Below are positions 33,445 through 56,461 of a stretch of 64,000 nt of DNA, piece by piece. The stretch spans positions 1 to 64,000 of the IMG/VR virus record IMGVR_UViG_3300035070_002626; one strand, given 5' to 3'. The first letter of the stretch is position 1. Each line of letters opens with the position of its first letter. The notes beneath the pieces were generated by a model, which did no database searches, had not been told where the DNA came from, and saw only the letters and a program-made list of their open reading frames with translations. A program made the position numbers and the translations under genes.

Positions 33445-33487
33445 CAGACTCTCTGTTTTGTTAAACATATAATAACACTGATAGTTG

Positions 33488-40249: not shown

Positions 40250-40632
40250 TTTACTTCTGTGTATCCGTCTCCGAGATCACGCTCTCTTGTAAAGCGTACT
40301 TCAGGATCTGCTTGGAATTGTTCGTATGTTTCCATAACAACATTACGGCATACATTTTGAAACCAGCGATCAACAATTTCGTGGTCAGGTTCATTTGGTT
40401 GTCCTTGGTAACCAGCCCTTACAAGATTTGCTATAAACTTTTCATTCCAGTCAAGTTCAAATGCGCCCTGGTCGATGTCACCTTCGGCAAGTTCCATGCT
40501 TAGTATAGCAACATAAGGCTCGCCCTTTTCAGTGGCAATCTCTTTGTCAGTTTTAGTTACTTTCTTGGGTTTAACAGCAGGCTTAACTTCTGGTTTTGTT
40601 AAGCCTAGTGTCTTTTTAAATTTATCAAACAT
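40246..40632 (-). CDS. Hypothetical phage protein
   Basis: AAGGA RBS before MFDKF; FELDWN..F motif. Confidence 0.65.
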   Translation of the reverse strand: MFDKFKKTLGLTKPEVKPAVKPKKVTKTDKEIATEKGEPYVAILSMELAEGDIDQGAFELDWNEKFIANLVRAGYQGQPNEPDHEIVDRWFQNVCRNVVMETYEQFQADPEVRFTRERDLGDGYTEVK

Positions 40633-41395
40633 GCGTGTTCCTTTTAAATACTGGGATAGGCTGCATCTTATGCAAATTGCGTTTGCGAATCTCAAGATAT
40701 TGTTTTACTTGAGTTTTGTCCTCTTCGCCAAGCGACTCAACATCAATACCTTGCTCGTCAATGTCCATGCATTTTTCTAAATCACTGTAGCTCATGCCAT
40801 GCAATTGATCCTCATCAACACGCCCATCATCCCACAATCCATCTGTGGGTTTGGCATCGATAATTTCTTGGCTAACTCCAAGTTGTTTACCTAATGCCCA
40901 TACTTCAGTTTTTGTTAAGTCTGCAATTGGAGAGATATCAACTCCCCCGTCTCCGTACTTAGTGTAAAAACCTACTCCAAAGTCTTCTACTTTGTTGCCT
41001 GTTCCGACTACAATACCGCCATGCGTTTGCGCTTTTTGATACAATGTCATCATGCGTAATCTGGCACGACTGTTTGCTAGTGCTAGTGGGGAATAAGCAT
41101 GTTGAAACAAGTCTTCAAACTTCTCGAATACATCTGTAAGATCGATTGTTTCAAAGCTGGCGTTCATGTACTGTGTGTTTAGGCGCAAGCAATGATCAAC
41201 ACCCAAGTCTGTTTGCTCTGCTTTTTGTCGAATTGGCATAACCAAGCACAACGTGGGCACACCGGATAACGCACACAGTGTACTGACAACAGCACTGTCA
41301 ATTCCGCCACTAACACCAACTACTAATTGATCAATCCCGTTTTTAAGTGCATATTCTCTAATCCATTGCGGAATATCTTTTGTTAAATCACTCAT
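40625..41395 (-). CDS. nadE: NH3-dependent NAD+ synthetase
   Basis: GVSGGIDS PP-loop, NSRARLRM, GTGN..E, GFYTKYGDG, PTDGLW, DEDQL. Confidence 0.92.
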   Translation of the reverse strand: MSDLTKDIPQWIREYALKNGIDQLVVGVSGGIDSAVVSTLCALSGVPTLCLVMPIRQKAEQTDLGVDHCLRLNTQYMNASFETIDLTDVFEKFEDLFQHAYSPLALANSRARLRMMTLYQKAQTHGGIVVGTGNKVEDFGVGFYTKYGDGGVDISPIADLTKTEVWALGKQLGVSQEIIDAKPTDGLWDDGRVDEDQLHGMSYSDLEKCMDIDEQGIDVESLGEEDKTQVKQYLEIRKRNLHKMQPIPVFKRNTHV

Positions 41396-41467
41396 AATTG
41401 CTTTCTTACTTTTTCGTATTGCTCTTCGGTAATCTTTTTGCCTTTAATATAATTCATGTCTTCTTTG

Positions 41468-42364
41468 CTAAGTCCCCCAGGCATTTCCGAATAAACTAAT
41501 GTGGAGTCGGGGAGTGAATCTCCATCCTTCGTCCATACACGCTTGGGCAACGTCATTAACATTGAGGGAATATTCTTCACTGCGACCGCCCATTGGCATA
41601 AGATATACTGGACATTGTACCCCGGCACTTTGATAAGCACTGACAGCTTTTTTGACTTCAACAAAATCGTCTTGATCAGCGACAACAAACTTAAAATAAA
41701 TGTCACTACCGTCAACAAGGCTGTACTCATGAGCAACATTAGGTTTAATAGCATCTTCCCAAGATTCTCCCGAAACACTAAGTTTTGGGGAACAACTCCA
41801 AGTGACTGTAAAGTCGTCATTGTTGTTGAGATAGTTGAAGAAATCATCGTGTAGGTGTTGTGTAGTGTTTGTTTCAAATGTAACATTTTTCAAGTCCTGC
41901 ATACGTGGGTGTTCAAATAGTTCAACATACAATCGTTGCCAAGCAAGCAATGGTTCACCACCAGTTAAGATAAGATGAACGTCTTGTCCATTGTCTTGCA
42001 CCCACTTACCATTGGGAGTAAGCGATAATAGATGTTCAACTACTTCGTCAATTGTTGCTTCTTTGTTAAAGTGCTTAAACTCGGGATAGATACTTGCATA
42101 TGTATCACAACCTGTGTGAATAATAGGCAAGTCATTAAACTCCTTAGTTGTTTTATCAACGCCGGCGTCCAATAATGCTTTTACTTCTGCATTGTAACGC
42201 TGCCCGTTTGCATGTTTTTCTGCACGACTGGGCTCATCTTTGCCGAGGCCAAAGTTCATACAACGCAAGTTACAACCAAAGGTGCGTAGGAATACACTGG
42301 GTACTCCTACAAACTTGCCTTCGCCTTGCACACTATAAAATGCTTCACTATATCTTAGTTTCAT
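41468..42364 (-). CDS. queE: 7-carboxy-7-deazaguanine synthase (radical SAM)
   Basis: FYSVQGEG, FLR.FGCNLRC...CDT, LTGGEP, FETN, SPK, RLH..LFG. Confidence 0.92.
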   Translation of the reverse strand: MKLRYSEAFYSVQGEGKFVGVPSVFLRTFGCNLRCMNFGLGKDEPSRAEKHANGQRYNAEVKALLDAGVDKTTKEFNDLPIIHTGCDTYASIYPEFKHFNKEATIDEVVEHLLSLTPNGKWVQDNGQDVHLILTGGEPLLAWQRLYVELFEHPRMQDLKNVTFETNTTQHLHDDFFNYLNNNDDFTVTWSCSPKLSVSGESWEDAIKPNVAHEYSLVDGSDIYFKFVVADQDDFVEVKKAVSAYQSAGVQCPVYLMPMGGRSEEYSLNVNDVAQACMDEGWRFTPRLHISLFGNAWGT

Positions 42365-42987
42365 TTCGATACCTCTTCGTTTGGATCCCAACGTTTCCAC
42401 CATTCTTCCCACGGAAATACTATCCAAGACGGGTCGTCGATTTTATTAATTTCTTCAGCGCAATATCTAATAGGTAATTTGCTTTCACTTGCAGTATTAT
42501 CATACAGCACAGCAACTCGTACTGTGTTCTCCCACACAAGATTCCACAACTGTTCGCTGTTGTCTCGACTAGGAGAACAATTGGCTTCCCAATCTTGCTT
42601 GATCCAGTTCAGCGTAGCACCACTGTCGTTAATATCGTCGACAATAAGGATTTTCTTTTTAAGAGATGGATCCCATCGTGCGCCAGACATACCAGTTTTA
42701 GTTTCATCATTGTAACCAAACGCTTCTTCGGCCATCCAGCAGTTACTTTCGCAATCTTCTGGTTTACCATCCCGCAACCGTACATCCAATGTGTGCATCT
42801 TAACATCGAGATACTGACTTATTAAGTTTGCAACTGTTAAGCCACCACGTGTAATACCGACAACATAATCTGGTTGCCAATTGTCAATTTGCATTTGTCG
42901 CAATATGTCTTGAGTTTGCCGTTGCACATCATGCCATGTTACAAATACTTTTTTCACACTTTTCTCGCTTTTACCATCATATGCCAA
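42361..42987 (-). CDS. Type I phosphoribosyltransferase (xanthine/guanine PRT-like)
   Basis: GITRGGL, LIVDDINDSGAT PRPP loop, WIVFPWE. Confidence 0.88.
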   Translation of the reverse strand: MAYDGKSEKSVKKVFVTWHDVQRQTQDILRQMQIDNWQPDYVVGITRGGLTVANLISQYLDVKMHTLDVRLRDGKPEDCESNCWMAEEAFGYNDETKTGMSGARWDPSLKKKILIVDDINDSGATLNWIKQDWEANCSPSRDNSEQLWNLVWENTVRVAVLYDNTASESKLPIRYCAEEINKIDDPSWIVFPWEEWWKRWDPNEEVSK

Positions 42988-43730
42988 CCCAGGTATTCGT
43001 TAACTGCTTCACGCATTTCCTCGCTCATAGCAGCAAACCAGGGTTCTAACACATAGTTTCCCTTCTTGTACTCTTCTATATTATACATGAAACAGTGGCT
43101 TTGGCGCAACCTTTCAATTGTCCATTTTGTAGTAGGCAACAACTCATATATCTCGTCTTTGCTATATGCTTGTGCATAAGGACACGCATCTTGTGCTTCG
43201 TATTGATCCAGACCTTTTTGTATCATTGCCATTTTCCAAGAGTTTTTAGCATATACCAAAAGACGCAGTTCGCCGCCGTCAACTAGTGCATTGTGCATGT
43301 TGTTCAAGCTCAATTCAATGTCTGGAAAATGGTGTATTACTCCCATGCTGTATACAAAGTCAAATTTACCAAGATCGCTAAGGTCATCCTGTACATTACG
43401 CACATGAAACTCTCCGGGTAATCCTAGTACATCAAATCTCTGTTTACAAAGATCGATGCTTACACTAGAAAGATCAATGCCTACATATTCAGCTCCGTGT
43501 TTAGCAAATTCTTCAGCTTCGGTTCCAATGCCTGATCCTACTTCAAGTACTCGTTTTCCTTGCCATTGGTGATATCCAGCAAATTCACGTAGGTGCGGCT
43601 CGACTTTAAATCGTCGCTTGCTAACTTCGGCAAAAAACTCTTTAGTACCAACAGGGCTTGTGCCATGATTGATATTACACGGCTGAGCATTCCAGTAATC
43701 TGCAATGCGTTGTTTTAAATCACTGCTCAT
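42954..43730 (-). CDS. Class I SAM methyltransferase
   Basis: VLEVGSGIG, GIDLS, FDFVYS.GVIHH. Confidence 0.88.
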   Translation of the reverse strand: MSSDLKQRIADYWNAQPCNINHGTSPVGTKEFFAEVSKRRFKVEPHLREFAGYHQWQGKRVLEVGSGIGTEAEEFAKHGAEYVGIDLSSVSIDLCKQRFDVLGLPGEFHVRNVQDDLSDLGKFDFVYSMGVIHHFPDIELSLNNMHNALVDGGELRLLVYAKNSWKMAMIQKGLDQYEAQDACPYAQAYSKDEIYELLPTTKWTIERLRQSHCFMYNIEEYKKGNYVLEPWFAAMSEEMREAVNEYLGWHMMVKARKV

Positions 43731-44556
43731 ATTTCCAAGTTCCTAAAAATCCTTGAGGGTCGTTTTCTCTCATGCGTGTCCAGACGTCATACCCGCCTTT
43801 ACGTGCACCATCTAAATATCCATTGTCTTGACCAAGTCGTTTGCGGAACCATTCCATTTTGTAACCCCATAGAATCCTTGTTTGCGCAGTCGGGGGATAA
43901 AGAAAATCCTTGGGGTTAGACATGTCGCCTTCGAGTCGTTCTGGCTGTCGCTCTGCATATGTTTCGTCGTCGTTGTTGCCAGTTAAGTCAGCTCTGTCGT
44001 GGATGCACTCGCTTTTGAGTTGAATCATTGCATCACATATATATGCTACTTGACTAATCCATCCGTCGGTAATAACATGCGGAGATACACAGCCAAAAAG
44101 TATCAACCAATCTCGGGGAATAACCGGAAAGATAGCATATGGATGACCGTGATTATCTGAGAATCTTTGTACTGCAAATTGCCCTGAATGGCTGAGAATT
44201 TCAGTGTCCCATCCCTTGCTCACCATTATAGCATCATCATTCCAAACACACAGCCATTCGCCTTTACTATGCTGGGCTAATATATTAGTGTATTCGTTTA
44301 GTCGATGATATCCCATGCGAGGTTGTGTAAACACATACAGATCTAAATCTGCTTCTTCAAAATATGGAATCATGTCACTTTCAACATAGTCAATAGTTTT
44401 TTGATCATCGTCATCAATTGCAATCATGAATTCAATATCATGCGGGTTATCAGCAGTATCAATCATGCTCTGCATACTGCTCAATGCTTGTACTGGTCTC
44501 CCGCGAGTTGGGAACATTACAGATATTTTCTTACTTGGATTAATTTGAAATGTCAT
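43720..44556 (-). CDS. GT2-like (GT-A) glycosyltransferase
   Basis: ISVMFPTRGR, IDDDD, WNDD (DxD-like). Confidence 0.75.
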   Translation of the reverse strand: MTFQINPSKKISVMFPTRGRPVQALSSMQSMIDTADNPHDIEFMIAIDDDDQKTIDYVESDMIPYFEEADLDLYVFTQPRMGYHRLNEYTNILAQHSKGEWLCVWNDDAIMVSKGWDTEILSHSGQFAVQRFSDNHGHPYAIFPVIPRDWLILFGCVSPHVITDGWISQVAYICDAMIQLKSECIHDRADLTGNNDDETYAERQPERLEGDMSNPKDFLYPPTAQTRILWGYKMEWFRKRLGQDNGYLDGARKGGYDVWTRMRENDPQGFLGTWKYEQ

Positions 44557-45173
44557 TATCGTTTCTCTATAATTTTATCAGCCAAGCCCCATTCAACTGC
44601 TTCTGCCGCAGTAAGGAATGTATCAAACTTCATAGTCTCTGACATTTCGTCATATGTCTTGCCGGCTGTGTTGTGCTTAACGTAAAGCTCTGTAAGGCGT
44701 CGATTTACTTTTTTGCTCTCTTCCATGCTGCGTACTGCATCTTCAAACTGTAGCTCTTGGACATACACACTACCGCTTGTTCCACGTGTACCTGAGCTCA
44801 CACGGTGAATCATTGTTCGTGATTCTGGCAATACAATACGCTTGCCTGCTGCACCTGCTTGTGCAAGGAATGAGCCCATGCTGCATGCTTGTCCGATAAC
44901 TACTGTGGATACATCGCACTTGATAAATTGCATGGTATCGTAAATACCAAGTCCTGCACTTACCTGCCCTCCTGGGCTGTTAATATAAAGCAAGATGTCC
45001 TTGTCTGGGTCTTCGCTTTCTAAAAACAACAGTTGTGCAATAATTGCATTAGCCATATTGTCCTCAACTGGACCATTCAGCATGATAATACGATCTTTCA
45101 GTAATCGACTGTAAATGTCGTATGCACGTTCGCCTTTTGAAGTAGTTTCAACTACCATTGGAATTAAGGACAT
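44556..45173 (-). CDS. clpP: ATP-dependent Clp protease proteolytic subunit
   Basis: [24 protein letters not shown] (Ser), MIH (His). Confidence 0.95.
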
Positions 45174-45649
45174 TATTCAGAAAACCTTTCTTTGCGTACA
45201 ATAAATGGTGTGTAAATTGCGCTGTTAGCACCGTGCTCCATGCACTCTGCAGATTCGCACCAACAACGATTGTCTGTTGCTTCTCTAATAAGTTTATCAG
45301 CAAACTTCCATGCGTGTTCTGCAAACTTTTCTGCACCCACTCCGTCTAGTACTGTAACTTCTGCTAGACCCATGTTTTCAAGTTCTGCAAACTTGTACAA
45401 GAACGGATCTTCTCTATCAATTACTGTCTTATGATCAAATGTATCTTCTAGCCATGCTTTAAGAGGTTTAAGTCCTCCAAAGTCAACGGCCCAGTTTTTA
45501 TTGTCTAGCTCGCTACATCCAAATGTAAACTTGAAACCCAAACTATATCCGTGTAAGAATTTACAATGTGAATGGTCTGCATGTGGTTGACGGAACACCG
45601 CTGAAAGTCCGATGTTGTGTCCGTAAGTTTTTGTTGAATAATGTGGCAT
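45173..45649 (-). CDS. queD: 6-carboxy-tetrahydropterin synthase
   Basis: [22 protein letters not shown]-terminal E...N.A. Confidence 0.9.
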
Positions 45650-45718: not shown

Positions 45719-46444
45719 TCAGTTCTTCCAGACGTGTGCAGAATAACCTTTACCATTGGTATCCCCGCCCTGATTGTCTAGTTCTTCTCCATTGTAAGAC
45801 ACACCGTCGATGATGTCTTCCCCGTTTGGATATTCATTGCAGTGGAACATCAGTTTCTTAGGATCAAATTCGCCTACTGTTTTGATGATAGCATCAAAAA
45901 AACTGCCTTTTTCACTGCTATACATTTGTAGTACGTATTCGCCTTGTTCTTCATACTCTTCACCTTCGCCCCAATCGGTGCCTTCAACCTCGTAATTGGT
46001 TTCCTCTTGCAACTTGTCAACTAGGTCGCTTACTTTGTCGTCAATTACATCAGCAACATGCTTGCTCATGTATTCATCACTGTCAACTTCGTTGATAATA
46101 AGATAAGCACTACTGTATTCAACTCCCATTTGGTGACAAAACTCATTAGGTGCTTCGTACCAAGGTGATTTAAATGCGGATTCGCCATATTCAGTTAGAA
46201 AGTCTGCTTCTTTCGGAATAGTTCCTAGTTCATCGTAATCACAATCGTCTGGATCATCATTGATCAGATACTCTACCAAGTCGCTGTCGTGATGCTCTTT
46301 TAAGTGTGCGTTCCAAAATTCATATGCTTCTTTGGTGATATTTATGTATGCTGCTTCACCACCATAACCTCCAATGCTAAGACGATAATATCGTGGGCCC
46401 TTGATAGTGTCAATTAGTTCTTCTTTTTGTTCAATACTAGCCAT
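45719..46444 (-). CDS. Hypothetical highly acidic protein
   Basis: GGGAG RBS before MASIEQK. Confidence 0.65.
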   Translation of the reverse strand: MASIEQKEELIDTIKGPRYYRLSIGGYGGEAAYINITKEAYEFWNAHLKEHHDSDLVEYLINDDPDDCDYDELGTIPKEADFLTEYGESAFKSPWYEAPNEFCHQMGVEYSSAYLIINEVDSDEYMSKHVADVIDDKVSDLVDKLQEETNYEVEGTDWGEGEEYEEQGEYVLQMYSSEKGSFFDAIIKTVGEFDPKKLMFHCNEYPNGEDIIDGVSYNGEELDNQGGDTNGKGYSAHVWKN

Positions 46445-46823
46445 TTGTATAACTCCCTGCGCCCGGAATAACATTGCGAACACCGCCAGTTGGGTCAGCG
46501 CAATCCCCTTCACGACGGAAAATTAAATGTACATGAGGATACATACAAGTTTGCCCGGCGCTCTCGCCTATGTTAATGCCAACATTGTATCCAGTGATTT
46601 CATTATTTTGTACTTGAACATTTTCGTGTCCCATGGTGCATGCATATTTGAAACACTTCATAATGCTATCCAGTGTAGCATCACGAGGTACAACAAGAGT
46701 ATGCCCAGGAGTAACCGGAAAACCATCGTTGAAAATTACAAAATCTCTAGTTTCAAACTGCACATTAGTCCAAGGTGCTCGACCTTCGGCTTGTGCTACG
46801 GCTAACGTATCTAGTCTATCCAT
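46437..46823 (-). CDS. HIT-family nucleotide hydrolase
   Basis: FPVTPGHTLVVP, GYNVG.N.G..AGQ...PHVHLI. Confidence 0.9.
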   Translation of the reverse strand: MDRLDTLAVAQAEGRAPWTNVQFETRDFVIFNDGFPVTPGHTLVVPRDATLDSIMKCFKYACTMGHENVQVQNNEITGYNVGINIGESAGQTCMYPHVHLIFRREGDCADPTGGVRNVIPGAGSYTNG

Positions 46824-46873
46824 TGTATTCTCCGTTGTGTATAGATTTATTGTACTATGTTTAATAGTATATG

Positions 46874-47746
46874 TCAACCTTTTTCGAGTAATCTGTGCAG
46901 TGACTTAGAATCAGTAGGAAAAATATTTAGGCCATCACATCGTATTTCGTAACCCAAAGATCGCAATCGTTGTTGTACAATTGAAGCAGCAACTATGTTT
47001 AGTTCTTTCCAACTAAACGCAACATCGTTAATAGTATTATCAACGACAACATCTAACAAATTAAACTCGTCTATTATATATTGTTGTTTTTTTATCCACT
47101 CTTCGACGAACAAATCTATGTCGACCATTGCTTGTGCATTGCAAAAACTAAAAATACGGGTGATAGCATCTTTGGTCTGAAATAACATCTCAGTAGTGGA
47201 TATTTTTAAAAAACTATCTGGTACTTCGTATTTTGAATTAATCCATTGTTGCACGTATGTAACATAAAACAAACTCATCCACTCTCGCCATTCCCAGGGT
47301 TGCATTTGACTCCAGTGTGTATACTCGCTGTTCCATTTTACAATATCACATTCATTTCCAATGGCAAATGTTTCGAGACCTAGCTGACGCCTTTTCCCTA
47401 CTGCAATTTTATGATACTGGAACAATAAGTTGAGTTCGGCTGCCCGTAATGATTCTGCATATATTAATATATTTTTACTAGAGGGGGTAAGCGGATACGT
47501 TTCTAAAATTTTAGAAAGGGTCCCGTCTCTGGTTGGATATATAGGAGTGGCTATTTCTGCGTCTATGGTTTGATTATAAGCCGACATACTAAGTGGATGC
47601 CAAGATTTTGCAAACCCGTGAACAGAACCGTCGGGTTGTAAACCACGATCCAACAGTTCCGGATTTGTAAAATTATTACTAAACTCTCTCAGTATATACT
47701 CAACTGTTGAGCCAAACATACCTGGCACAAAAAATATCGAGATCAT
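46874..47746 (-). CDS. Hypothetical protein, AT-rich insert
   Basis: Long ORF; no recognised motif. Confidence 0.6.
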   Translation of the reverse strand: MISIFFVPGMFGSTVEYILREFSNNFTNPELLDRGLQPDGSVHGFAKSWHPLSMSAYNQTIDAEIATPIYPTRDGTLSKILETYPLTPSSKNILIYAESLRAAELNLLFQYHKIAVGKRRQLGLETFAIGNECDIVKWNSEYTHWSQMQPWEWREWMSLFYVTYVQQWINSKYEVPDSFLKISTTEMLFQTKDAITRIFSFCNAQAMVDIDLFVEEWIKKQQYIIDEFNLLDVVVDNTINDVAFSWKELNIVAASIVQQRLRSLGYEIRCDGLNIFPTDSKSLHRLLEKG

Positions 47747-48445
47747 TTACTTTCCACAGGAAAACTCTTGTTGCAATTTGATGTTGTCAAAGAATTCTTT
47801 CTTTGTACCAGAGTCTTCCCTGAAACTACCTTTAAGCACAGTTGTTTGGGTAAGACTACTACTCGCCATAATGCCGCGATTCTCACAACAACCGTGTGTT
47901 GCTTGGATATACACACCCAGGTTTTCTGCACCGGTGGCGCTGGAAATCTCCCGTGCAATATCATTTGCAAGTTCTTCTTGTAGAGTTCCACGCCGAGCGC
48001 ACCATTGTGCAATACGTGTGTACTTGCTGAGTCCAATAAGTTTATCAGCAGCAATAATACCAATGTATGCTACACCGCTTACTGGCTGGTGGTGATGACT
48101 ACACATGCTCTTTAGCTCACTGCGCACTACTAGCATACCTTCATAGCGATCGTCGCTGTCATTGGGAAATGCAGTTGCACTTGGCATAGGATCATAACGT
48201 CCTGCCATGATCTCGTTAAAGTACATCTTAGCCAGTCGACGTGCAGTGCCGTGTGAGTTAGGGTCGTTCTCTCGATCAATCAACAGTGTGTCGAGCACAC
48301 CTTCAAACGCTGTAGTAGCCTCGTTAATCAAATCTTCTTTAATGTTAGGTGTAATATAATCTGAAATATTATCGCCGGCCCAGTATCGTTTGCCTTCTGC
48401 TGTCATATTATCACGCAGAATTTGCGATGTTGTTTTGTTTGTCAT
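47747..48445 (-). CDS. folE: GTP cyclohydrolase I
   Basis: T.RR.AKM, SMCSHH, IGLSK..R, LQE, H.C...RG. Confidence 0.95.
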   Translation of the reverse strand: MTNKTTSQILRDNMTAEGKRYWAGDNISDYITPNIKEDLINEATTAFEGVLDTLLIDRENDPNSHGTARRLAKMYFNEIMAGRYDPMPSATAFPNDSDDRYEGMLVVRSELKSMCSHHHQPVSGVAYIGIIAADKLIGLSKYTRIAQWCARRGTLQEELANDIAREISSATGAENLGVYIQATHGCCENRGIMASSSLTQTTVLKGSFREDSGTKKEFFDNIKLQQEFSCGK

Positions 48446-48451
48446 TTGTTT

Positions 48452-48478
48452 CTCCGAGTTAGGGTCGTGGATGACCAC
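48452..48478 (-). promoter_or_regulatory. Candidate compact pseudoknot leader sequestering the folE RBS
   Basis: GGUC-AUCCAC-GACC-CUAAC-UCGGAG; loop UCC is complementary to GGA of the Shine-Dalgarno. Confidence 0.4.
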
Positions 48479-48518: not shown

Positions 48519-49115
48519 TTAGTCGGTAATTTTTATTTTAGTGAGATCTGGATAAGTTACTTTTTGTGTATCTGGGTCTTTGAGTTGATTTGCGGCAAGC
48601 ATTTCTAATCCTTTAACACAATCTTCAATGGTAGGACGATAATGGTATCCAACTTGAAAGTTAATTTGGTCTTGCCAAGGACTTATACTTAAATCTCTGC
48701 CATCGTAACTAGCACGTTTCAGCCAATGATATTCTTCTTCGTTGTCCAACAAGATTGCGCCACCATGTCCTATTTCCAGTGTTTTGCTGTAACCAAAGCT
48801 CAAACACTGTTGTTGTCCTGGACGGTACATATCACGCTCAAAGCGTCTTGCACTGTCCCAAATATTTGTTGGAGAAATTTTATATTCCCCTTCCCAATCA
48901 TATTCGTCCATTGAGTATGGTATTGCAAGTTTATGAAATATCATTGGCACACTGAGATAAGTTCTTGTAGGAATTCTACATCTTAGTAGGAACCTTTGTT
49001 GCCGTCTCAAACACAATTCAATTGCATGTGTGCAGCAATCTGTTAATACAACATAAGGAGCGCCAGTGAATTTGCTTAGTGCTTGTTCGAATTCAGTAAA
49101 CTTAGTGAAGCTCAC
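48519..49115 (-). CDS. Short DegT-like PLP aminotransferase
   Basis: DCCTHA, TYLSV, WDSA, SF...K.L..G.GGAIL. Confidence 0.72.
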   Translation of the reverse strand: MSFTKFTEFEQALSKFTGAPYVVLTDCCTHAIELCLRRQQRFLLRCRIPTRTYLSVPMIFHKLAIPYSMDEYDWEGEYKISPTNIWDSARRFERDMYRPGQQQCLSFGYSKTLEIGHGGAILLDNEEEYHWLKRASYDGRDLSISPWQDQINFQVGYHYRPTIEDCVKGLEMLAANQLKDPDTQKVTYPDLTKIKITD

Positions 49116-50067
49116 GTGTATACCACTTCCATGCATGTTCAACAATATCATCAGTATGATATTCATTTTGCCAATTTGCTACTTCAAAAAACTTTTTGTT
49201 GTCAGCAACTAATATGTTAGGATCACCGTCACGCATAGGTCCTTCGATTATCTCACGGGGCTTGCTGTTAGATACTACACAACATTTGTTGATAATTTCT
49301 AGATTGCTAGCACCAAGTCCGGTTGATAGATTGTAAAATCCAGCTGTTACTCGATGTTCTGTTGCATAATAGTGCGCTTTGGCAATGTCTGCAACATGTA
49401 CATAATCACGCACACAAGTTCCGTCATCTGTTGGCAATCCTACACCATTGAGTGTAAACACCTGATTATCTCTAATAGCTTCCATTACTCGTGCAATGAT
49501 GTGTGTAGCTGACTTTTCTTGCCCGTGCCGCCCAAGTGGGTCTGCACCAGCAGCATTAAAGTAACGAAATCCAACATAGTTAATGCCATATGCATGACTA
49601 TATGTTTCCAACAGTTGCTCTACCATGTATTTGCTCATGCCATAAGGAGAGATTGGAAACTTGGGGTCGTCTTCATGTATAGGTGTTGCAATTGGATTTC
49701 CATACACCGCAGCACTACTTGAAAAAATAAACTTGCTGTGAATTTTGCGTTCTACCATATAATCCAACAACGTTTTAGTAGCAATAAAGTTGTTGTCATA
49801 GTATGTCTTTGGATCCATAAGACTGGGCCCAACTAAACTTGATCCTGCACAATGCACAATAGCATCTGGGCAATGGAAACTAAAACATTCTAAACCAGAA
49901 GGCGTTGCATATGATTCTTCGTAGTATGAGTCATACCATTGTACAAGGTGCGAACTCAACGGCCGGCGATCTATGCCAACAACTGTCCACCCTTGTTCTT
50001 TGAAATAGATTGCTGTTTGCCCACCGATGTATCCAGCAGCTCCAGTAATAATTACTGTTTTACTCAT
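49102..50067 (-). CDS. galE: UDP-glucose 4-epimerase-like enzyme
   Basis: TGAAGYIG, FSSSAAVYG, SPYG.SK, RYFNAAGA, DGTCVRDYVHV.D. Confidence 0.9.
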   Translation of the reverse strand: MSKTVIITGAAGYIGGQTAIYFKEQGWTVVGIDRRPLSSHLVQWYDSYYEESYATPSGLECFSFHCPDAIVHCAGSSLVGPSLMDPKTYYDNNFIATKTLLDYMVERKIHSKFIFSSSAAVYGNPIATPIHEDDPKFPISPYGMSKYMVEQLLETYSHAYGINYVGFRYFNAAGADPLGRHGQEKSATHIIARVMEAIRDNQVFTLNGVGLPTDDGTCVRDYVHVADIAKAHYYATEHRVTAGFYNLSTGLGASNLEIINKCCVVSNSKPREIIEGPMRDGDPNILVADNKKFFEVANWQNEYHTDDIVEHAWKWYTRELH

Positions 50068-51619: not shown

Positions 51620-52039
51620 TTATGAATTATTATAATTTATAGTACATCCGTTTTCGCCATCCTCGCTAACTTCAATGACAACATTTCGCCCTGGGTATTT
51701 GCCAGCTACATTAAGATAGATATCGTCTGCAATCATTTCGCAACTTTTGTAATCCAGTGACAAAATTCCATCGCCAAACAGTTTTTGCAACCAACGTGAA
51801 AACTGAATAAACTCGATGTCTCTGTCATTGTGGAATACATCAATTCCCACACGAAAATGAAACATATGCCTGTGCGGATGTCCTAGAAACGATACATCGT
51901 CCCAATCGCCTGTTGCTAATTTAGGATCAGTTAATGCTGCTGGATACTTGTGTATGCCTTCCTTTTGAAAGGTTACCCAAATTTGCCGACGTGCAGATTG
52001 CATCGTTGCATCAATCACGGTGCGTTCATCTTGATTCAT
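51620..52039 (-). CDS. QueD-paralog T-fold protein, DpdL-like (putative CDG decarboxylase)
   Basis: FLGHPHRHMF matches LxxxHRHxF; DRDIEF, SCE, VSEDGENG. Confidence 0.65.
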   Translation of the reverse strand: MNQDERTVIDATMQSARRQIWVTFQKEGIHKYPAALTDPKLATGDWDDVSFLGHPHRHMFHFRVGIDVFHNDRDIEFIQFSRWLQKLFGDGILSLDYKSCEMIADDIYLNVAGKYPGRNVVIEVSEDGENGCTINYNNS

Positions 52040-52545
52040 TATACTACCTTATCTTGTGTGTAAGCACTCCAGGGAGTGAATTTTTCTCTATCCATTAAGT
52101 TGTGCAAACTATGGCACCACACTCCTGGATTTGATTCATTGAAATCAATGTCATCAACTTTGACCATTGCGTTATATCCCCATTGTGATACATATGGAAT
52201 AGATACACGTATTTGTGGAATGAAGTTATCGTATTCGACCATACCGCCTTCTAAACACCATTCTAAGTTAATGTTACTTGGAATATCTAAACTACATATT
52301 ACATCCTTTTTTAGCAAAGGCACTAGCATTTGTTCCCACGCTTCAAACTCATCTGCTGTTTGAGGATTATAACTATGATTAGCTCCAAAGAAGATATGCT
52401 GGCAGTTGTTAGCTTTATATTTGGCTAGTATGCTATCAACCGGCTGGACACCTACTACAAACAAGGTTTTTAATCCATAGGCCGGTGTACGTTCTACTTC
52501 GGTTCCAACAAAGTAGTTAACACCGTCATGTCCTTCACGATCCAT
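52039..52545 (-). CDS. Hypothetical protein linked to the deazaguanine cluster
   Basis: GTEVE.T...G.KTLFV, HIFFGAN, N.GVWC; coupled to the DpdL-like gene. Confidence 0.65.
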   Translation of the reverse strand: MDREGHDGVNYFVGTEVERTPAYGLKTLFVVGVQPVDSILAKYKANNCQHIFFGANHSYNPQTADEFEAWEQMLVPLLKKDVICSLDIPSNINLEWCLEGGMVEYDNFIPQIRVSIPYVSQWGYNAMVKVDDIDFNESNPGVWCHSLHNLMDREKFTPWSAYTQDKVV

Positions 52546-52753: not shown

Positions 52754-52782
52754 ATTATACACTAACTATACCATGCTGTCAA
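52754..52782 (-). promoter_or_regulatory. Consensus sigma70 promoter
   Basis: Exact TTGACA-N17-TATAAT. Confidence 0.8.
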
Positions 52783-54289
52783 GTAAATCTAGAGCATTTT
52801 GATCTAAATCTATTTCTTGTTCTGGCTCTTCTACTTCAAACAAACTATTAAACTGTGTTGCTGCATTAACAATACGCTTTCCGGTAAATCCTCTCGTACC
52901 TTTGACACTATCCCAAAATTTGCTGTATTCATTGATGATGCTCATACTTTTATTAAAGTCTTTTGCTGCAAATACACGTTCGACTACATCGCGGAACAAT
53001 ATTCTATCAAATGTTTCTTGTACTAACATGGCAGGAATAACTCCAGCATCGTATTCTCTGTTGGCACGTTGCACCGATTCGATGTGCATCCATACATTGT
53101 GCCCCATAAGCAATGCATACGAAAAACTATCCCATGAAGTTTTTCCTTCTTTGCCAATTTTGTTTAGCATACCTGGGGCATAATGGCATATATCCCCGAT
53201 GGTCATACGTTCTGTAATAGGACTGTTTTCAAAAAGTTTGTGCACACCGTCCTTGAGTACTGCATCTCGGAATGGTGTTGTGTCGCCTGCATATTTTTTG
53301 TTATCAATTGTGGGTTCCATTTGGTAACTCCACTTGCCACGATCTTCAATTCGAATACTATTGTATACTTGCCCGTTTGCTGTAGCAAGAAATGGGCTTG
53401 CACAGTCAAAGCTGATAGTGAAGTTTGCATTTGCATGACGTCTTACGCTGCGTTGAATATCAGTAAGCAAACACGCCCACTCTAGCTTGCTTGTTCCCAG
53501 GAAGTGCATCCAGTCATGCTGCCCTTTTTCAAGCAAACCTTCGTGTATAAGTGTAACCAAACGTTTTAGAACTAGATGCACATCACACATGTTTTGCCCG
53601 CCCATTGCCCAGCCGTTGAATGGTCGATCCATCTTGTCACTGCAAAAGCCTTTCATTTTGTCATACCAATGATCTGCTTCCTGGTGATTTGATCCTTGCA
53701 GCACGTTTAACACCTTTAGGTCGCCACCGCGATTTGCCATCCAAAATTCGTTGTTAAAGTGTGTAGCTGTTACTGCATCATCATAACTATGAATCCCGCA
53801 CAGTGCACTTGCTTTTTTATCCAAGTAAGTCCATGTTGGAATATCCATAGTCATGCCATGTGTAGCAATTCCGTGTTGCCATGCAATAACTTGCTCACGT
53901 TTCTTTTCTGCATTTTTGTCTTTGGGATTAGCCCATTCACCGGGCCACACACCTTTGGCAATCTGGAACCCGCCGCTGTCGGCTAGCATGATAGTGTCTG
54001 CTTCTCTATTACGAACCATGTCTTCTTTTGGCACATGCTTTGATAGATCCATGTCAGCATGCCCAGCACTATACAAACTATATTTGTATGGAAACAACCC
54101 TTCTTTGCTGTTAAGCCAGTTTAAGCTTTCCATATTAGGGATACCTTTAGGCAATCGATCACCGATTATGCTTTTTGATTCATCTGGGTATCGTTCTTTG
54201 CCAATATATCCAGCATAAAAACTGCTAATAGCAGGCAAAAATATTGCATAATCATTTTGTTTTTGTGTTAGGTTATCTTGTTTTAGCAT
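52766..54289 (-). CDS. TGT-superfamily base-exchange transglycosylase, DpdA-like
   Basis: DSGGFQ, MDIP, VLQG, GWAMGG, HFLG, SFD..S and HN motifs; no CxCxxC zinc site; next to clamp/PolB and que genes. Confidence 0.75.
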   Translation of the reverse strand: MLKQDNLTQKQNDYAIFLPAISSFYAGYIGKERYPDESKSIIGDRLPKGIPNMESLNWLNSKEGLFPYKYSLYSAGHADMDLSKHVPKEDMVRNREADTIMLADSGGFQIAKGVWPGEWANPKDKNAEKKREQVIAWQHGIATHGMTMDIPTWTYLDKKASALCGIHSYDDAVTATHFNNEFWMANRGGDLKVLNVLQGSNHQEADHWYDKMKGFCSDKMDRPFNGWAMGGQNMCDVHLVLKRLVTLIHEGLLEKGQHDWMHFLGTSKLEWACLLTDIQRSVRRHANANFTISFDCASPFLATANGQVYNSIRIEDRGKWSYQMEPTIDNKKYAGDTTPFRDAVLKDGVHKLFENSPITERMTIGDICHYAPGMLNKIGKEGKTSWDSFSYALLMGHNVWMHIESVQRANREYDAGVIPAMLVQETFDRILFRDVVERVFAAKDFNKSMSIINEYSKFWDSVKGTRGFTGKRIVNAATQFNSLFEVEEPEQEIDLDQNALDLLDSMV

Positions 54290-54291
54290 TT

Positions 54292-54762
54292 TTAGCCTTC
54301 AAGTTTATAGCATCCAGGACTGATTAGTGCCCATTGACAATGATCGTTTATTATAGCATCCACAGTAACATACTGTTGATCCTCAGTGACTATTCCCCAT
54401 TCGGGAAAAATATAAAAATTATGATCTTCAAGGTGCTTTAATTTAGTAACACCCATTGGACCATAATGTATACAGATGTTCCATGCCGCACCAACTATAA
54501 TCCAATTGTTTGTTTTATGTTGGTGCGACAAGAACTCGCTGGTACTATTTAGATAGATAGTATCATTGTCAAACGTTTCTTCAATTATTGCATCTATAGG
54601 ATCAGATTCAGTCTTTCCGCAGCAGATTTTACTCACAATAGTTAAATTGTTTAATTGTTCAACAACCCGTGTATAAAACTGCCTTGTTGCAGTTTCGTTA
54701 CGCATTCCGTCTACTTTAGAATTCGCTGCCCAGCAATCAATGAATACTACTCCCCAATTCAT
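54292..54762 (-). CDS. Hypothetical protein (weak cysteine-hydrolase-like pattern)
   Basis: VVFIDCW, IVG.AW..C. Confidence 0.5.
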   Translation of the reverse strand: MNWGVVFIDCWAANSKVDGMRNETATRQFYTRVVEQLNNLTIVSKICCGKTESDPIDAIIEETFDNDTIYLNSTSEFLSHQHKTNNWIIVGAAWNICIHYGPMGVTKLKHLEDHNFYIFPEWGIVTEDQQYVTVDAIINDHCQWALISPGCYKLEG

Positions 54763-55493
54763 TACTTGCTTTGTGCTGGCAGAATGTAGTTGTAAACTGC
54801 CAACCCACTATCAACTGTAATTTTAGCAGCGCCGCCATCTGAAATGCGTACAGTTTTATCGCCAGTTAGATTCATAATTGCAATAAACTGCGCAACTGGC
54901 CAACTCCATGATCGTGTTAAGTTGCCTTCTACATCATGATGAAATACAAAATCACCAGCGTGTGTGCTATGATCGCCAAACAAGAACTTCAAGTGCCCAT
55001 CTTCAGTTTTAGTCTGAAAAGTCAATTCTTCAGCATTTGCTTGTGCCATCATTTTTAAACGCATAATACTAGCAGATGTAGGTTCAAACTCAACATTCCA
55101 TGGAATGTCTTTCATCTTAGCATTTTTAAGTTTTTCGTTAACAATTTCACTTACCATGAAGCGATAATCGTTTTTAAAGTCGCCTGCGGCATTTTTAAAA
55201 TGCATACCAACTGGTGCTGATTCGCCGTTACGATCTTGCCGAGTTACGGTAATTTCAGCATTTTCCTTGTATTCAGCAATGTTTAACAGTATCTTTAGTT
55301 TACCCAAGTTGGGCATACCAAATGTACCTATAAATTCAGCAACAGGTGTGTGATACTTTGCATCTAAGACAACACTCTTGTCTTCTGCTAAGCCAGTAAT
55401 AGTTGTTTCAGTATCGCTGCCTGTAATTTTAATAAGTTGGATACAGCCCAAATCATGACTGTGTTCAACCAAGTCTAGTAGATAATCTCTCAT
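54762..55493 (-). CDS. Putative DNA polymerase sliding clamp
   Basis: 243 aa clamp-like beta/alpha pattern; C-terminal ITVDSGLAVYNYILPA; two genes from PolB. Confidence 0.6.
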   Translation of the reverse strand: MRDYLLDLVEHSHDLGCIQLIKITGSDTETTITGLAEDKSVVLDAKYHTPVAEFIGTFGMPNLGKLKILLNIAEYKENAEITVTRQDRNGESAPVGMHFKNAAGDFKNDYRFMVSEIVNEKLKNAKMKDIPWNVEFEPTSASIMRLKMMAQANAEELTFQTKTEDGHLKFLFGDHSTHAGDFVFHHDVEGNLTRSWSWPVAQFIAIMNLTGDKTVRISDGGAAKITVDSGLAVYNYILPAQSK

Positions 55494-56461
55494 TTATTTT
55501 CTCCGGTGTGTTGTATTAAGTGTTTAATTTTGCCCAGGCTTTGCCCGCCTTTGATGCTAGTTCTAATTCCTGGTTTTTGTATTTCTAACCAACTTACGTT
55601 CTTCTTCATATCAAAGCTTGCTACTACATTAAATCCATATCGGGTACACGCTGCTTTTACCAAGTGGCCCGGAGTATAAGTGTAATACGAATTTCTAAAA
55701 TTGTCAATACCAATTGGATAATCACAATTATTATAGGTAAAAATGGCTGTACCTCCTGGCTGTAAAACAGAAAAAATATCGGATAGATACTGTTCAATGA
55801 GCCTCAGAGGGCGAAAATTAAAGTAATCAATTGCAACAACTAACCCAATTTGCCCAGTTGGTAAGTCATGTAACACACTATCTTTTGTTTCATCGACAGT
55901 GTAGTATCGTACTCGGCGCTGATAATCAGTCTTCCATAATTTTTTAACTTCCTTAAACATATCTTGATGATCATCAACTAGGTACAACGGATCACAACTT
56001 ACTAGATGATCAGTTACATCACCTAGTCTAGGGCCGAGTTGCAATGCAGAATGTTTCCAGTTAACATGCTTTGTAATTCGTCCTACAAGAAAATCTCGAA
56101 TTTCGGGATCACCTAGTAGATTTTTAAATCTATCTCGATCAAGTTTATAGTCAGCATCGTCCCTTAACCCTTCTTGGTAAATCTCTTCACTTTTCTCATT
56201 CAAACACGGACCTTCTATTTCACCGAGCTCTTGGCCTAGACACACCCTAAACTTAGAAATATCCTGGTATACTGCGTCTAATTCTCTAATTATATTTTTA
56301 TGTCGGTCCAGTATATTGCTCTTAAGATTATTAACATCAATATCGTATGTATTTAGATCGTTGTTAAACTTCTGCAATAATTTTTCAATTGCTTGCCTTG
56401 ATTCCGTTAAATCTAACTCGTCTAACAGATGTTTATAGTTAACAAGGTTGACTAAATCCAT
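55490..56461 (-). CDS. Coiled-coil + degenerate methyltransferase-domain protein
   Basis: LQLGP..G, ...L.PGG.AIFTYN. Confidence 0.55.
   Translation of the reverse strand: MDLVNLVNYKHLLDELDLTESRQAIEKLLQKFNNDLNTYDIDVNNLKSNILDRHKNIIRELDAVYQDISKFRVCLGQELGEIEGPCLNEKSEEIYQEGLRDDADYKLDRDRFKNLLGDPEIRDFLVGRITKHVNWKHSALQLGPRLGDVTDHLVSCDPLYLVDDHQDMFKEVKKLWKTDYQRRVRYYTVDETKDSVLHDLPTGQIGLVVAIDYFNFRPLRLIEQYLSDIFSVLQPGGTAIFTYNNCDYPIGIDNFRNSYYTYTPGHLVKAACTRYGFNVVASFDMKKNVSWLEIQKPGIRTSIKGGQSLGKIKHLIQHTGENK

What the first reader, a model, noticed from the sequence alone, without database searches (positions are those of the whole stretch)
40625..42987. NadE and a purine PRTase flank queE where queC would normally be
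Seen: the order is PRTase-queE-(30 aa ORF)-nadE. Established: NadE adenylates a carboxylate and amidates it with NH3, the same chemistry as the first QueC half-reaction (CDG to amide). PRTases convert free bases to nucleotides. Inference A: PRTase plus NadE could make a CDG/ADG nucleotide, a pre-replicative or QueC-independent route. Inference B: the NadE motifs look canonical, so it may instead rebuild NAD+ against NAD-depleting defences.
Basis: inference. Interest (0 to 1): 0.6.

Follow-up and report, generated by a model that had tools for sequence, protein, structure and literature searches.

The report
Ordinary NadE beside phage deazaguanine genes
The gene order is real, but the NadE is an ordinary NAD synthetase gene picked up from marine bacteria. 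QueC is missing because this jumbo phage carries the known QueC-free 7-deazaguanine DNA-modification kit (DpdL plus a DpdA-like transglycosylase).

Summary
The window is the first 64 kb of a 300-kb marine jumbo-phage record. On the minus strand, MTase, PRTase, QueE, a 30-aa ORF and NadE follow each other with overlapping stops and starts.

The idea that NadE replaces QueC does not hold, for three reasons.
- Nine to thirteen kb upstream lie a DpdL homologue (LxxxHRHxF motif) and a 507-aa protein. That protein folds as tRNA-guanine transglycosylase and keeps both catalytic aspartates. With FolE, QueD and QueE this is the published QueC-free route of phages phiST and ACP17.
- NadE is 53-58% identical to the single housekeeping NadE of Pelagibacter, and it keeps the majority residue at all 98 conserved columns.
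- NadE is dispensable and mobile. Sister phages and Pseudomonas phage PA5oct have the same PRTase-QueE backbone without it. T4-like marine phages have it without QueE.

The PRTase is the old, conserved partner of QueE. It is XGPRT-like, and its substrate is open: displaced guanine or a deazapurine. A role for NadE against NAD-depleting defences is untested, and I found no other NAD-salvage gene among those searched.

The parts
40625..41395 (-). NadE, NH3-dependent NAD+ synthetase family (256 aa)
   Evidence: PF02540 E 2.5e-50 and TIGR00552 169.6 bits against a 63.65 cut-off. Best solved relatives are NAD synthetases 3FIU and 2E18. It is 53-58% identical to Pelagibacterales NadE.
41392..41484 (-). 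30-aa ORF that overlaps the QueE end and the NadE start
   Evidence: Read from the sequence. A similar small ORF follows QueE in 27 of 145 loci, with or without NadE, and only with this QueE allele type.
41468..42364 (-). QueE-like radical-SAM CDG synthase (298 aa)
   Evidence: phrog_2076 E 6e-53. N-terminal matches to the QueE TIGRFAMs fall below their cut-offs. It has Cys31, Cys35 and Cys86, with an insert of about 50 aa between the last two.
42361..42957 (-). Type-I phosphoribosyltransferase, XGPRT-like (198 aa)
   Evidence: PF00156 E 6.7e-16. Best solved relatives are archaeal purine PRTases 1VDM and 4Z1O, with a conserved PRPP loop and C-terminal WIVFPWE. Homologues occur in phiST, BUCT-ZZ01, StAshley and PA5oct gp163.
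42954..43730 (-). SAM-dependent methyltransferase
   Evidence: Methyltransf_23/12/25/11 at E about 1e-17; phrog_22502.
43720..44556 (-). GT2-type glycosyltransferase
   Evidence: phrog_14945 E 3.7e-12. The nearest Atlas clusters carry PF00535.
44556..45173 (-). ClpP-like protease
   Evidence: PF00574 E 1.1e-65.
45173..45649 (-). QueD-like CPH4 synthase
   Evidence: PF01242 E 3.4e-13; phrog_2389 E 6.4e-40.
46437..46877 (-). HIT-family protein
   Evidence: PF01230 E 1.1e-9. It recurs next to FolE or PRT in related loci.
47747..48478 (-). FolE, GTP cyclohydrolase I
   Evidence: PF01227 at 128 bits. NF006824 scores 132.7 bits, below its 202-bit cut-off.
51620..52039 (-). DpdL homologue (proposed CDG decarboxylase, a QueD paralogue)
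   Evidence: tblastn to phiST CGPG_00067 at E 2.7e-11. Motif LGHPHRHMF matches LxxxHRHxF. phrog_17812 E 2.7e-33. Present in 18 of 25 related records, including all 4 that are at least 90% complete.
52039..52545 (-). 168-aa protein, conserved partner of DpdL, function unknown
   Evidence: Homologue of ACP17 gp122. Adjacent to DpdL in 12 of 14 related regions.
52766..54289 (-). DpdA-like transglycosylase (TGT fold, 507 aa)
   Evidence: AlphaFold model pLDDT 78.9. The top 50 Foldseek PDB hits are all TGT, E about 6e-8. Motifs DSGGFQ and FDC align with E. coli TGT D89 and D264. Invariant in 15 homologues.
54762..55493 (-). Sliding clamp
   Evidence: Homologues are annotated as PCNA or beta clamp in PA5oct-like phages and in Phosso.
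56461..59121 (-). Family-B DNA polymerase
   Evidence: PF00136 E 1.3e-35. 43-48% identical to the PA5oct polymerase.

Best explanation
The window holds a phiST/ACP17/PA5oct-type 7-deazaguanine DNA-modification system.

The proposed route:
- FolE, QueD and QueE make 7-carboxy-7-deazaguanine (CDG). This is inferred from family membership.
- A DpdL homologue is proposed to decarboxylate CDG to 7-deazaguanine. This is the published proposal and has never been shown biochemically.
- A 507-aa TGT-fold enzyme with both catalytic aspartates exchanges guanine in DNA for the deazapurine. This is inferred from fold and motifs.

QueC is not part of this route, so nothing needs to replace it.

NadE is an ordinary ammonia-dependent NAD+ synthetase gene of marine-bacterial type. 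It sits as an accessory gene between QueE and the next backbone gene in one sub-lineage of these jumbo phages. It most likely tops up the last step of host NAD+ synthesis during infection (inferred).

The PRTase is an old, conserved neighbour of QueE. It is XGPRT-like. Most likely it returns the guanine displaced from DNA to GMP, and so to the GTP that feeds FolE. This is inference and the substrate is untested.
For: DpdL:
- The homologue carries the LxxxHRHxF motif.
- It occurs in all four near-complete relatives.

p507 (the DpdA-like enzyme):
- It has the TGT fold and both catalytic motifs.
- It lies in the order clamp-p507-p168-DpdL in 11 of 14 related regions; all 14 hold p507 and DpdL.
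- The same PolB-clamp-p507-DpdL-PRT-QueE layout is found in Pseudomonas phage PA5oct.

The published model is that DpdL phages have FolE, QueD, QueE and a DpdA but no QueC (PMC10516641).

NadE:
- It is 53-58% identical to the NadE of Pelagibacterales.
- That gene sits among housekeeping genes (glmS, DAHP synthase, cysS) and is the only full-length NadE in two complete Pelagibacter genomes.
- The Pelagibacter and phage proteins get almost the same model scores: 177.6 and 179.6 bits on NF010587.
- Of 98 columns that are at least 90% conserved in 79 cellular NadE, 89 are kept at 90% or more in 39 QueE-linked phage NadE. The other 9 keep the same majority residue.
- QueE-linked and unlinked phage NadE are intermixed in the tree.

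NadE distribution:
- 74 of 78 QueE-seeded loci have no NadE but keep the backbone.
- No NadE was found in 12 group-A contigs.
- In a 99%-complete relative, NadE and QueE lie 77 kb apart.
- HTVC008M and P-TIM68 carry NadE beside UDP-glucose dehydrogenase, with no strong QueE match.

PRTase:
- The PRPP loop and the C-terminal motif align with solved purine PRTases.
Against: No enzyme here has been assayed.
- DpdL's decarboxylase activity failed to show in the original study (PMC10516641).
- 55% identity does not fix the substrate of NadE.
- NadE's closest solved relative, 3FIU, is, as I recall, the Francisella enzyme that prefers the mononucleotide NaMN. A ribotide substrate is therefore chemically conceivable.
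- NadE is translationally coupled to QueE through the small ORF.
- A CDG-specific PRTase exists in nature: TubE (PMC6112128).
- The guanine-salvage role for the PRTase is my inference only.
Confidence: 0.72

Rival explanations
1. Reader's inference A. The PRTase turns CDG into its ribotide. NadE then amidates the ribotide to an ADG nucleotide, which gives a QueC-independent and possibly pre-replicative route to dADG.
For: PRT, QueE, the small ORF and NadE are overlapping and co-oriented. NadE and QueC share the PP-loop fold and the adenylate-then-amidate chemistry (established knowledge). The F. tularensis NadE homologue is an NMN synthetase that acts on a mononucleotide (PMC3376133). TubE is a CDG-specific PRTase. 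No QueC is present.
Against: DpdL and a DpdA-like enzyme already complete a known route. NadE keeps every conserved residue of the housekeeping Pelagibacter NadE. NadE is missing in sister phages and in PA5oct, which have the same PRT-QueE-DpdL kit. It is present in phages without QueE. QueE-linked NadE do not form a clade of their own.
Confidence: 0.05
2. The PRTase alone is TubE-like. It makes a 7-deazaguanine or CDG ribonucleotide that is reduced, phosphorylated and incorporated by the phage polymerase, alongside or instead of base exchange.
For: Every homologue found in isolates lies in a phage with deazaguanine genes. It is adjacent to QueE in BUCT-ZZ01 and PA5oct. It is adjacent to FolE and one gene from a dNMP kinase and RNR in StAshley. 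It is next to a dNMP kinase and two genes from RNR in phiST, whose DNA is fully dDG (PMC10516641). TubE is a precedent. The marine proteins carry two inserts relative to solved purine PRTases.
Against: A DpdA-like transglycosylase is present in every relative examined. The field holds that all deazaguanine phages encode a DpdA and modify DNA after replication (PMC10516641). The acidic PRPP-loop residues typical of 6-oxopurine PRTases are kept. Guanine salvage explains the same linkage.
Confidence: 0.15
3. Reader's inference B, second half. NadE is a dedicated counter-defence that rebuilds NAD+ after NAD-depleting immunity has fired.
For: NAD+ reconstitution by phages is established for NARP1 and NARP2 (bioRxiv 10.1101/2024.02.11.579819, listed). 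Phage nadE within pncB-nadD-nadE clusters has been reported (PMC11662467).
Against: NadE needs NaAD or NaMN, not the cleavage products ADPR and nicotinamide (established knowledge). No NAPRT/NAMPT was found in this genome or in 7 relatives. The only cytidylyltransferase-like ORF above its cut-off in this genome is a sugar-1-phosphate nucleotidyltransferase. Adps and Namat were not searched.
Confidence: 0.12
4. NadE amidates a nucleotide-sugar uronate for a phage glycan pathway.
For: In HTVC008M and P-TIM68, NadE directly precedes UDP-glucose dehydrogenase, among glycosyltransferases, a carbamoyltransferase and a methyltransferase. Here it lies near a GT2 and a methyltransferase, and the genome has a UGDH homologue.
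Against: The conservation argument is the same as above. HTVC008M NadE branches beside the NadE of its own host group, SAR11, which fits a plain host-derived metabolic gene. No precedent is known to me.
Confidence: 0.04

Closest known systems
[quoted passage not shown] 2023, PMC10516641)
   Same: FolE, QueD, QueE and DpdL with the LxxxHRHxF motif, plus a TGT-superfamily transglycosylase and no QueC. The cluster lies next to the DNA polymerase. phiST also carries a PRTase homologue. ACP17 gp122 and gp124 have homologues here.
   Different: The transglycosylase here is 507 aa. It shows no sequence match to phiST DpdA3 and only a weak link to ACP17 gp123 through PA5oct gp168. The cluster is interrupted by ClpP, GT2, methyltransferase, HIT and NadE. 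The DNA modification itself has not been measured.
Pseudomonas jumbo phage PA5oct (Arenbergviridae), region gp173-gp158
   Same: The same backbone: PolB, clamp, a p507 homologue (gp168, 34% identity), DpdL (gp166, 52%), a PRTase homologue (gp163) directly before QueE (gp162), then the p149-like gene, exonuclease and p148.
   Different: It has no NadE, ClpP, GT2 or methyltransferase in the cluster, and its host is terrestrial or clinical.
NadE of Pelagibacterales and of marine T4-like phages (HTVC008M, P-TIM68, S-SSM7, Bellamy)
   Same: 50-58% identity over the full length, the same model scores and the same conserved residues.
   Different: Those genes lie among housekeeping genes in the bacteria, or beside UDP-glucose dehydrogenase in the phages. 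They do not lie beside QueE.
TubE / ToyH, deazapurine PRTases of tubercidin and toyocamycin biosynthesis (PMC6112128)
   Same: A small PF00156 PRTase encoded next to FolE/QueD/QueE homologues. TubE uses CDG and PRPP.
   Different: Those pathways make free nucleoside antibiotics in Streptomyces and have no transglycosylase.
QueC (7-cyano-7-deazaguanine synthase)
   Same: PP-loop ATP pyrophosphatase fold, and adenylation of a carboxylate followed by attack by ammonia.
   Different: The window NadE matches PF06508 over only 23 residues, at 18.3 bits, below the cut-off. It lacks a C-terminal cysteine cluster.

Membership tests
NH3-dependent NAD+ synthetase (NadE) | PP-loop SGGxDS motif and the NadE core signature | tested here: met
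   VSGGIDSAV at residues 28-36 and YTKYGDGGVDISP at 144-156. These columns are invariant in the cellular and phage sets.
NH3-dependent NAD+ synthetase (NadE) | Curated family model above its cut-off | tested here: met
   TIGR00552 scores 169.6 against 63.65, and PF02540 scores 171.3 against 21. The stricter equivalog NF010587 is not reached (179.6 against 255), but the sole Pelagibacter NadE scores 177.6 on it.
NH3-dependent NAD+ synthetase (NadE) | Amidation of NaAD (or NaMN) with ammonia and ATP | not testable with these tools
   This needs an enzyme assay.
QueC | PF06508 or TIGR00364 above cut-off over the whole protein | tested here: not met
   PF06508 scores 18.3 bits against a 22-bit cut-off, over residues 155-177 only. 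TIGR00364 scores 16.2 against 150.3.
QueC | C-terminal zinc-binding cysteine cluster | tested here: not met
   There is no cysteine in the last 45 residues of the NadE. That the motif is a QueC feature comes from my memory.
QueE (CDG synthase) | Family profile match over the full length | tested here: met
   phrog_2076 at E 6e-53, residues 1-297. The QueE equivalog models of NCBIfam match only in part and below their cut-offs.
QueE (CDG synthase) | Three cysteines for the radical-SAM cluster | tested here: inconclusive
   Cys31, Cys35 and Cys86 are the only candidates, and about 50 residues are inserted before the third.
6-oxopurine (XGPRT-like) type-I PRTase | PF00156 domain with a PRPP-binding acidic loop | tested here: met
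   PF00156 scores 58.4 against 26.3. LIVDDINDSGATL aligns with the PRPP loop of 1VDM and 4Z1O.
6-oxopurine (XGPRT-like) type-I PRTase | Equivalog-level match or a shown purine substrate | tested here: not met
   NF006613 (XPRT) scores 38.2 against 138, and TIGR01203 scores 24.1 against 150. The substrate cannot be tested here.
DpdL (proposed CDG decarboxylase) | QueD paralogue with LxxxHRHxF in place of CxxxHGH | tested here: met
   LGHPHRHMF is present. Identity to phiST CGPG_00067 is 33% in the alignment and 31% by tblastn at E 2.7e-11. phrog_17812 matches at E 2.7e-33.
DpdA / TGT superfamily | TIM-barrel TGT fold | tested here: met
   The model has pLDDT 78.9 and pTM 0.82. The top 50 Foldseek hits are all Z. 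mobilis TGT, with probability 1.00 and TM about 0.5 by target.
DpdA / TGT superfamily | Two catalytic aspartates (E. coli D89 in DSGGFQ and D264 in FDC) | tested here: met
   D104 in LADSGGFQI and D295 in SFDCASP align with E. coli TGT and are invariant in 15 homologues.
DpdA / TGT superfamily | Sequence-profile match (PF01702, DUF6610, DpdA3 PHROGs) | tested here: not met
   No hit was found. The PF01702 search also misses the accepted phiST DpdA3, so this test is weak.
Phage NAD+ reconstitution pathways (NARP2-like) | NAMPT-type PRTase plus an NMN adenylyltransferase | tested here: not met
   PF04095 is absent in this genome and in 7 relatives. The PF01467 hit is a sugar-1-phosphate nucleotidyltransferase. 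The NARP1 genes were not searched.

The most novel reading that the evidence does not exclude
The XGPRT-like PRTase travels with QueE or FolE in unrelated deazaguanine phages: marine jumbo phages, PA5oct, phiST, BUCT-ZZ01 and Brevundimonas phages. In two of them it sits beside a dNMP kinase and RNR. It could be a deazapurine PRTase like TubE. That would feed a nucleotide-level, pre-replicative route to 7-deaza-dGTP, and would run against the current view that all phage 7-deazaguanine modification is post-replicative. In NadE-bearing phages a side activity of NadE on the carboxy-ribotide would then be possible.
Probability: 0.15. Interest if true: 0.7.

Novelty: new member of a known kind. Interest (0 to 1): 0.28.

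Why it matters
As proposed, a NadE standing in for QueC would have been a new enzyme recruitment and a new route to modified DNA. The evidence points the other way, so the locus should not be followed up on that ground.

Three things remain useful.
- A widespread family of marine jumbo phages, seen in metagenomes from 16 studies, can be added to the QueC-free, DpdL-type deazaguanine phages.
- Their transglycosylase is so divergent that Pfam-based screens miss it. 'DpdA-less' calls made from profile searches alone are therefore unsafe.
- The PRTase is a recurrent member of phage deazaguanine clusters that the main text of the key paper I could read does not mention. It has a culturable model in PA5oct in which its role (guanine salvage or deazapurine activation) can be tested.

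Tried and rejected
- 'No DpdA, hence a pre-replicative route.' PF01702, PF20314, the phiST DpdA3 protein and its two PHROG families all found nothing. I held this view until the p507 alignment showed the TGT motifs and its model matched TGT. The view is rejected.
- p264 and p290 as DpdA3. They show no similarity, no phage homologues and no Atlas lead for p264. Their function stays unknown.
- The 243-aa ORF at 54762-55493 as DpdA. It is a sliding clamp.
- The CTP_transf_like ORF at 189 kb as an NMNAT. It is a sugar-1-phosphate nucleotidyltransferase within a sugar cluster.
- An NAD-dependent DNA ligase as an NAD consumer. None was found.
- A profile of p507 against PDB sequences. It gave no hit, so only the fold search worked.
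- PP-loop ORFs in NadE-less contigs: a 295-aa ORF, and a 243-aa QueC-like ORF next to DegT. They have no homologue in this genome, and I did not follow them further.
- The Sorci 2009 paper on the Francisella NMN synthetase could not be read. The identity of 3FIU therefore rests on my memory.
- Sequencing runs. All holders are kept as contigs only. Contigs from three metatranscriptome runs (94-95% identical relatives) cover the cluster, but they prove neither transcription nor modification.
- Literature searches for NAD synthetase or PRPP together with deazaguanine in phages found nothing relevant.
Full report
**What is there**

The window is the first 64 kb of a 299,910-bp IMG/VR virus record, estimated 86% complete. 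Nearly all genes in the region run on the minus strand.

Read directly from the sequence, five genes overlap end to start:
- A methyltransferase (42954-43730) ends in a GTGA overlap with a PRTase (42361-42957).
- The PRTase stop shares ATGA with the QueE start (QueE is 41468-42364).
- A 30-codon ORF (41392-41484) begins 17 nt before the QueE stop.
- That small ORF ends in ATGA with the NadE start (NadE is 40625-41395).

Family scans confirm the names:
- NadE: NAD_synthase at E 2.5e-50, and TIGR00552 above its cut-off.
- QueE: phrog_2076 at E 6e-53.
- PRTase: PF00156 at E 6.7e-16, with weak XPRT/HGPRT equivalog matches.

Further upstream lie a GT2 glycosyltransferase, ClpP, QueD, an unknown 264-aa ORF, a HIT protein, an unknown 290-aa ORF and FolE.

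No QueC was found in the record. In 24 related records, including two complete genomes with terminal repeats, the only PF06508 signal in the NadE-bearing genomes is the weak PP-loop match of NadE itself.

**Why QueC is missing**

Nine kb upstream of QueE lies a 139-aa ORF (51620-52039). It is a homologue of Cellulophaga phage phiST CGPG_00067 (tblastn E 2.7e-11; phrog_17812 E 2.7e-33). It carries LGHPHRHMF, which fits the LxxxHRHxF signature. Cui et al. 2023 use that signature to define DpdL, the proposed CDG decarboxylase of phages that have FolE, QueD, QueE and a DpdA but no QueC (PMC10516641).

At first no DpdA could be found. PF01702, DUF6610, the phiST DpdA3 protein and its PHROG families were all negative. 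That test is weak, because PF01702 also misses the accepted DpdA3 of phiST.

The 507-aa ORF two genes upstream of DpdL (52766-54289) turned out to be the transglycosylase:
- It has homologues in PA5oct (gp168, 34% identity) and, through PA5oct gp168, a weak link to ACP17 gp123.
- It gives a weak tblastn hit to a 'TGT domain-containing protein'.
- An alignment of 15 homologues has invariant DSGGFQ and FDC motifs.
- Its AlphaFold model (pLDDT 78.9, pTM 0.82) returns Z. mobilis tRNA-guanine transglycosylase as all 50 top PDB hits, at E about 6e-8 and probability 1.00.
- Aligned with E. coli TGT, its D104 and D295 fall on the two catalytic aspartates D89 and D264. The LMGVG-like and AVGG-like motifs also line up.

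The window therefore holds the full QueC-free kit that is already described for phiST- and ACP17-type phages. It lies next to the clamp and the family-B polymerase, as it does in phiST.

**The backbone and the insertions**

Fourteen related regions all hold clamp, p507 and DpdL. Eleven of them show the order clamp-p507-p168-DpdL, and FolE follows in eight. In the NadE-less marine contigs the whole set is contiguous: clamp-p507-p168-DpdL-(p92)-PRT-(HIT)-FolE-QueE-p149 (L277 and L278).

Pseudomonas phage PA5oct has PolB, clamp, gp168, gp167, DpdL, two small ORFs (the second is gp164), a PRTase homologue (gp163), QueE (gp162), and then the same downstream genes, including the 5'-3' exonuclease.

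PRTase-QueE is thus an old pair. NadE, and likewise ClpP, GT2, the methyltransferase and p264, are additions in one sub-lineage.

The counts are:
- Of 78 QueE-seeded viral loci with enough downstream sequence, 74 have no NadE but keep the backbone genes.
- Twelve such contigs hold no NadE anywhere in the sequence available.
- Of 45 NadE-seeded loci that can be judged, 28 have QueE upstream and 17 do not.
- In a 99%-complete 344-kb relative, NadE and QueE are 77 kb apart.

In Pelagibacter phage HTVC008M and Prochlorococcus phage P-TIM68, NadE (55% identical) precedes UDP-glucose dehydrogenase among glycan genes. P-TIM68 gives no QueE match and HTVC008M only a weak radical-SAM match.

The 30-aa ORF travels with this particular QueE allele, with or without NadE (27 of 145 loci). 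It is not a NadE accessory.

**Is the NadE changed?**

- Its nearest cellular relatives (53-58% identity) are the NadE of Pelagibacterales, marine archaea and Flavobacteria.
- In complete Pelagibacter genomes that gene lies between DAHP synthase and cysS, close to glmS. It is the only full-length NAD_synthase match in the genome, so it must be the working NAD synthetase there.
- The Pelagibacter gene scores the same as the phage protein on the curated models.
- Of 98 alignment columns that are at least 90% conserved in 79 cellular sequences, 89 are kept at 90% or more in the 39 QueE-linked phage sequences. The other nine keep the same majority residue, and no group-specific replacement exists.
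- In a midpoint-rooted FastTree, QueE-linked and unlinked phage NadE are intermixed, and HTVC008M NadE sits beside the SAR11 clade.

All of this fits a plain, horizontally mobile NadE.

The best solved relative is 3FIU. I recall this as the Francisella NMN synthetase, and PMC3376133 confirms that the Francisella NadE homologue prefers NaMN. A mononucleotide substrate therefore cannot be excluded, and that is what leaves inference A a small residual chance.

**NAD context**

No NAPRT/NAMPT was found in this genome or in seven relatives. The only cytidylyltransferase-like ORF above its cut-off in this genome is a sugar-1-phosphate nucleotidyltransferase inside a sugar-nucleotide cluster. There is no NAD-dependent ligase.

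NadE alone cannot rebuild NAD+ from ADPR and nicotinamide (established pathway knowledge). The counter-defence reading is therefore unsupported, though phage nadE genes within fuller NAD pathways are on record (PMC11662467).

**The PRTase**

- It is XGPRT-like. The best solved relatives are archaeal purine PRTases. The PRPP loop and the C-terminal WIVFPWE motif are conserved, and the marine proteins carry two inserts.
- It belongs to a very large metagenomic family, with 5,961 homologues.
- Among isolates its homologues were found only in phages with deazaguanine genes:
  - phiST and its relatives, whose DNA is fully dDG. There the PRTase sits next to a dNMP kinase and two genes from RNR.
  - Synechococcus phage BUCT-ZZ01, with the operon QueE-PRT-x-QueD-FolE.
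  - Brevundimonas phages, with RNR-dNMP kinase-FolE-PRT, in a genome that does have QueC.
  - PA5oct.
- I read it as salvage of the guanine released by base exchange, which would feed GTP back to FolE. That is inference.
- The TubE precedent, a CDG-specific PRTase (PMC6112128), keeps a nucleotide-level route open at about 15%.
- The main text of the key paper does not mention a PRTase, and my literature searches found no discussion of it.

**Occurrence**

The stretch is held by marine and seawater metagenomes from 16 studies. Contigs from three metatranscriptome runs, 94-95% identical relatives, cover the cluster. Contigs cannot show transcription or base modification.

**Verdict**

The gene order is real and inherited. 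The proposed recruitment of NadE in place of QueC is not supported. The locus is a new, mosaic member of the known DpdL/DpdA-type deazaguanine systems, with an ordinary NadE inserted beside QueE. The points that deserve attention are the divergent transglycosylase, which profile screens miss, and the unexplained but conserved PRTase.

Noticed in passing
window 52766-54289 (-): A 507-aa TGT-fold protein with both catalytic aspartates is missed by the PF01702, DUF6610 and DpdA3 profile searches. Screens that call phages 'DpdA-less' from Pfam alone would misclassify this whole jumbo-phage family.
   Followed up: yes
window 41468-42364 (-); loci L008-L083 and L090-L094: QueE is mosaic. The window's QueE is 83-87% identical to QueE of NadE-less contigs. 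It is only 44% identical to QueE of phages whose NadE is 81-83% identical. This suggests an allele swap inside the cluster, and the 30-aa ORF travels with this allele.
   Followed up: partly
window 41468-42364 (-), residues 31-86: QueE has about 50 residues inserted between the second and third candidate cluster cysteines (CNLRC ... HTGCDTY). Pfam found no family for the protein, and only the PHROG profile spans it.
   Followed up: no
window 52039-52545 (-) and 50064-51257 (-): Two proteins of unknown function are homologous to ACP17 gp122 and to ACP17 gp124 / PA5oct gp167. They look like conserved members of the DpdL module. The 397-aa one has faint GT1-like matches.
   Followed up: partly
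window 45719-46513 (-) and 46874-47746 (-): Two ORFs of 264 and 290 aa lie between FolE and QueD. They have no family, no homologue in phage isolates and no similarity to DpdA3. The 264-aa one recurs at 29-41% identity in related clusters.
   Followed up: partly
window 48519-49166 (-): A DegT-like ORF matches only profile positions 21-58 of 360 and overlaps the next ORF by 65 nt. It is probably a truncated or frameshifted aminotransferase gene.
   Followed up: no
window 920-2458 (+), 31918-33498 (-); G000 129.4-130.6 kb and 186-192 kb: The genome is rich in glycan genes. It has two carbamoyltransferase paralogues, a UDP-glucose dehydrogenase homologue (48% identical to HTVC008M's), and a second NDP-sugar cluster with a nucleotidyltransferase, dehydrogenase, dehydratase and aminotransferase.
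   Followed up: partly
loci L164/L165 (295-aa ORF) and L173 (243-aa ORF): NadE-less relatives carry other PP-loop ATPases. One is QueC-like with a C-terminal cysteine cluster and lies next to a DegT aminotransferase and a 262-aa ORF with no family match. Neither has a homologue in this genome.
   Followed up: partly
L174 (phiST 27.6-28.6 kb) and L182 (StAshley 13.9-15.8 kb): In phiST and in Brevundimonas phage StAshley the PRTase homologue lies beside a dNMP kinase and close to ribonucleotide reductase. The PRTase is not mentioned in the main text of Cui et al. 2023.
   Followed up: partly
window 44556-45173 (-): A ClpP-family protease gene sits in the middle of the deazaguanine cluster, between QueD and the GT2 gene. 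It is conserved at 92-100% identity in most close relatives.
   Followed up: no
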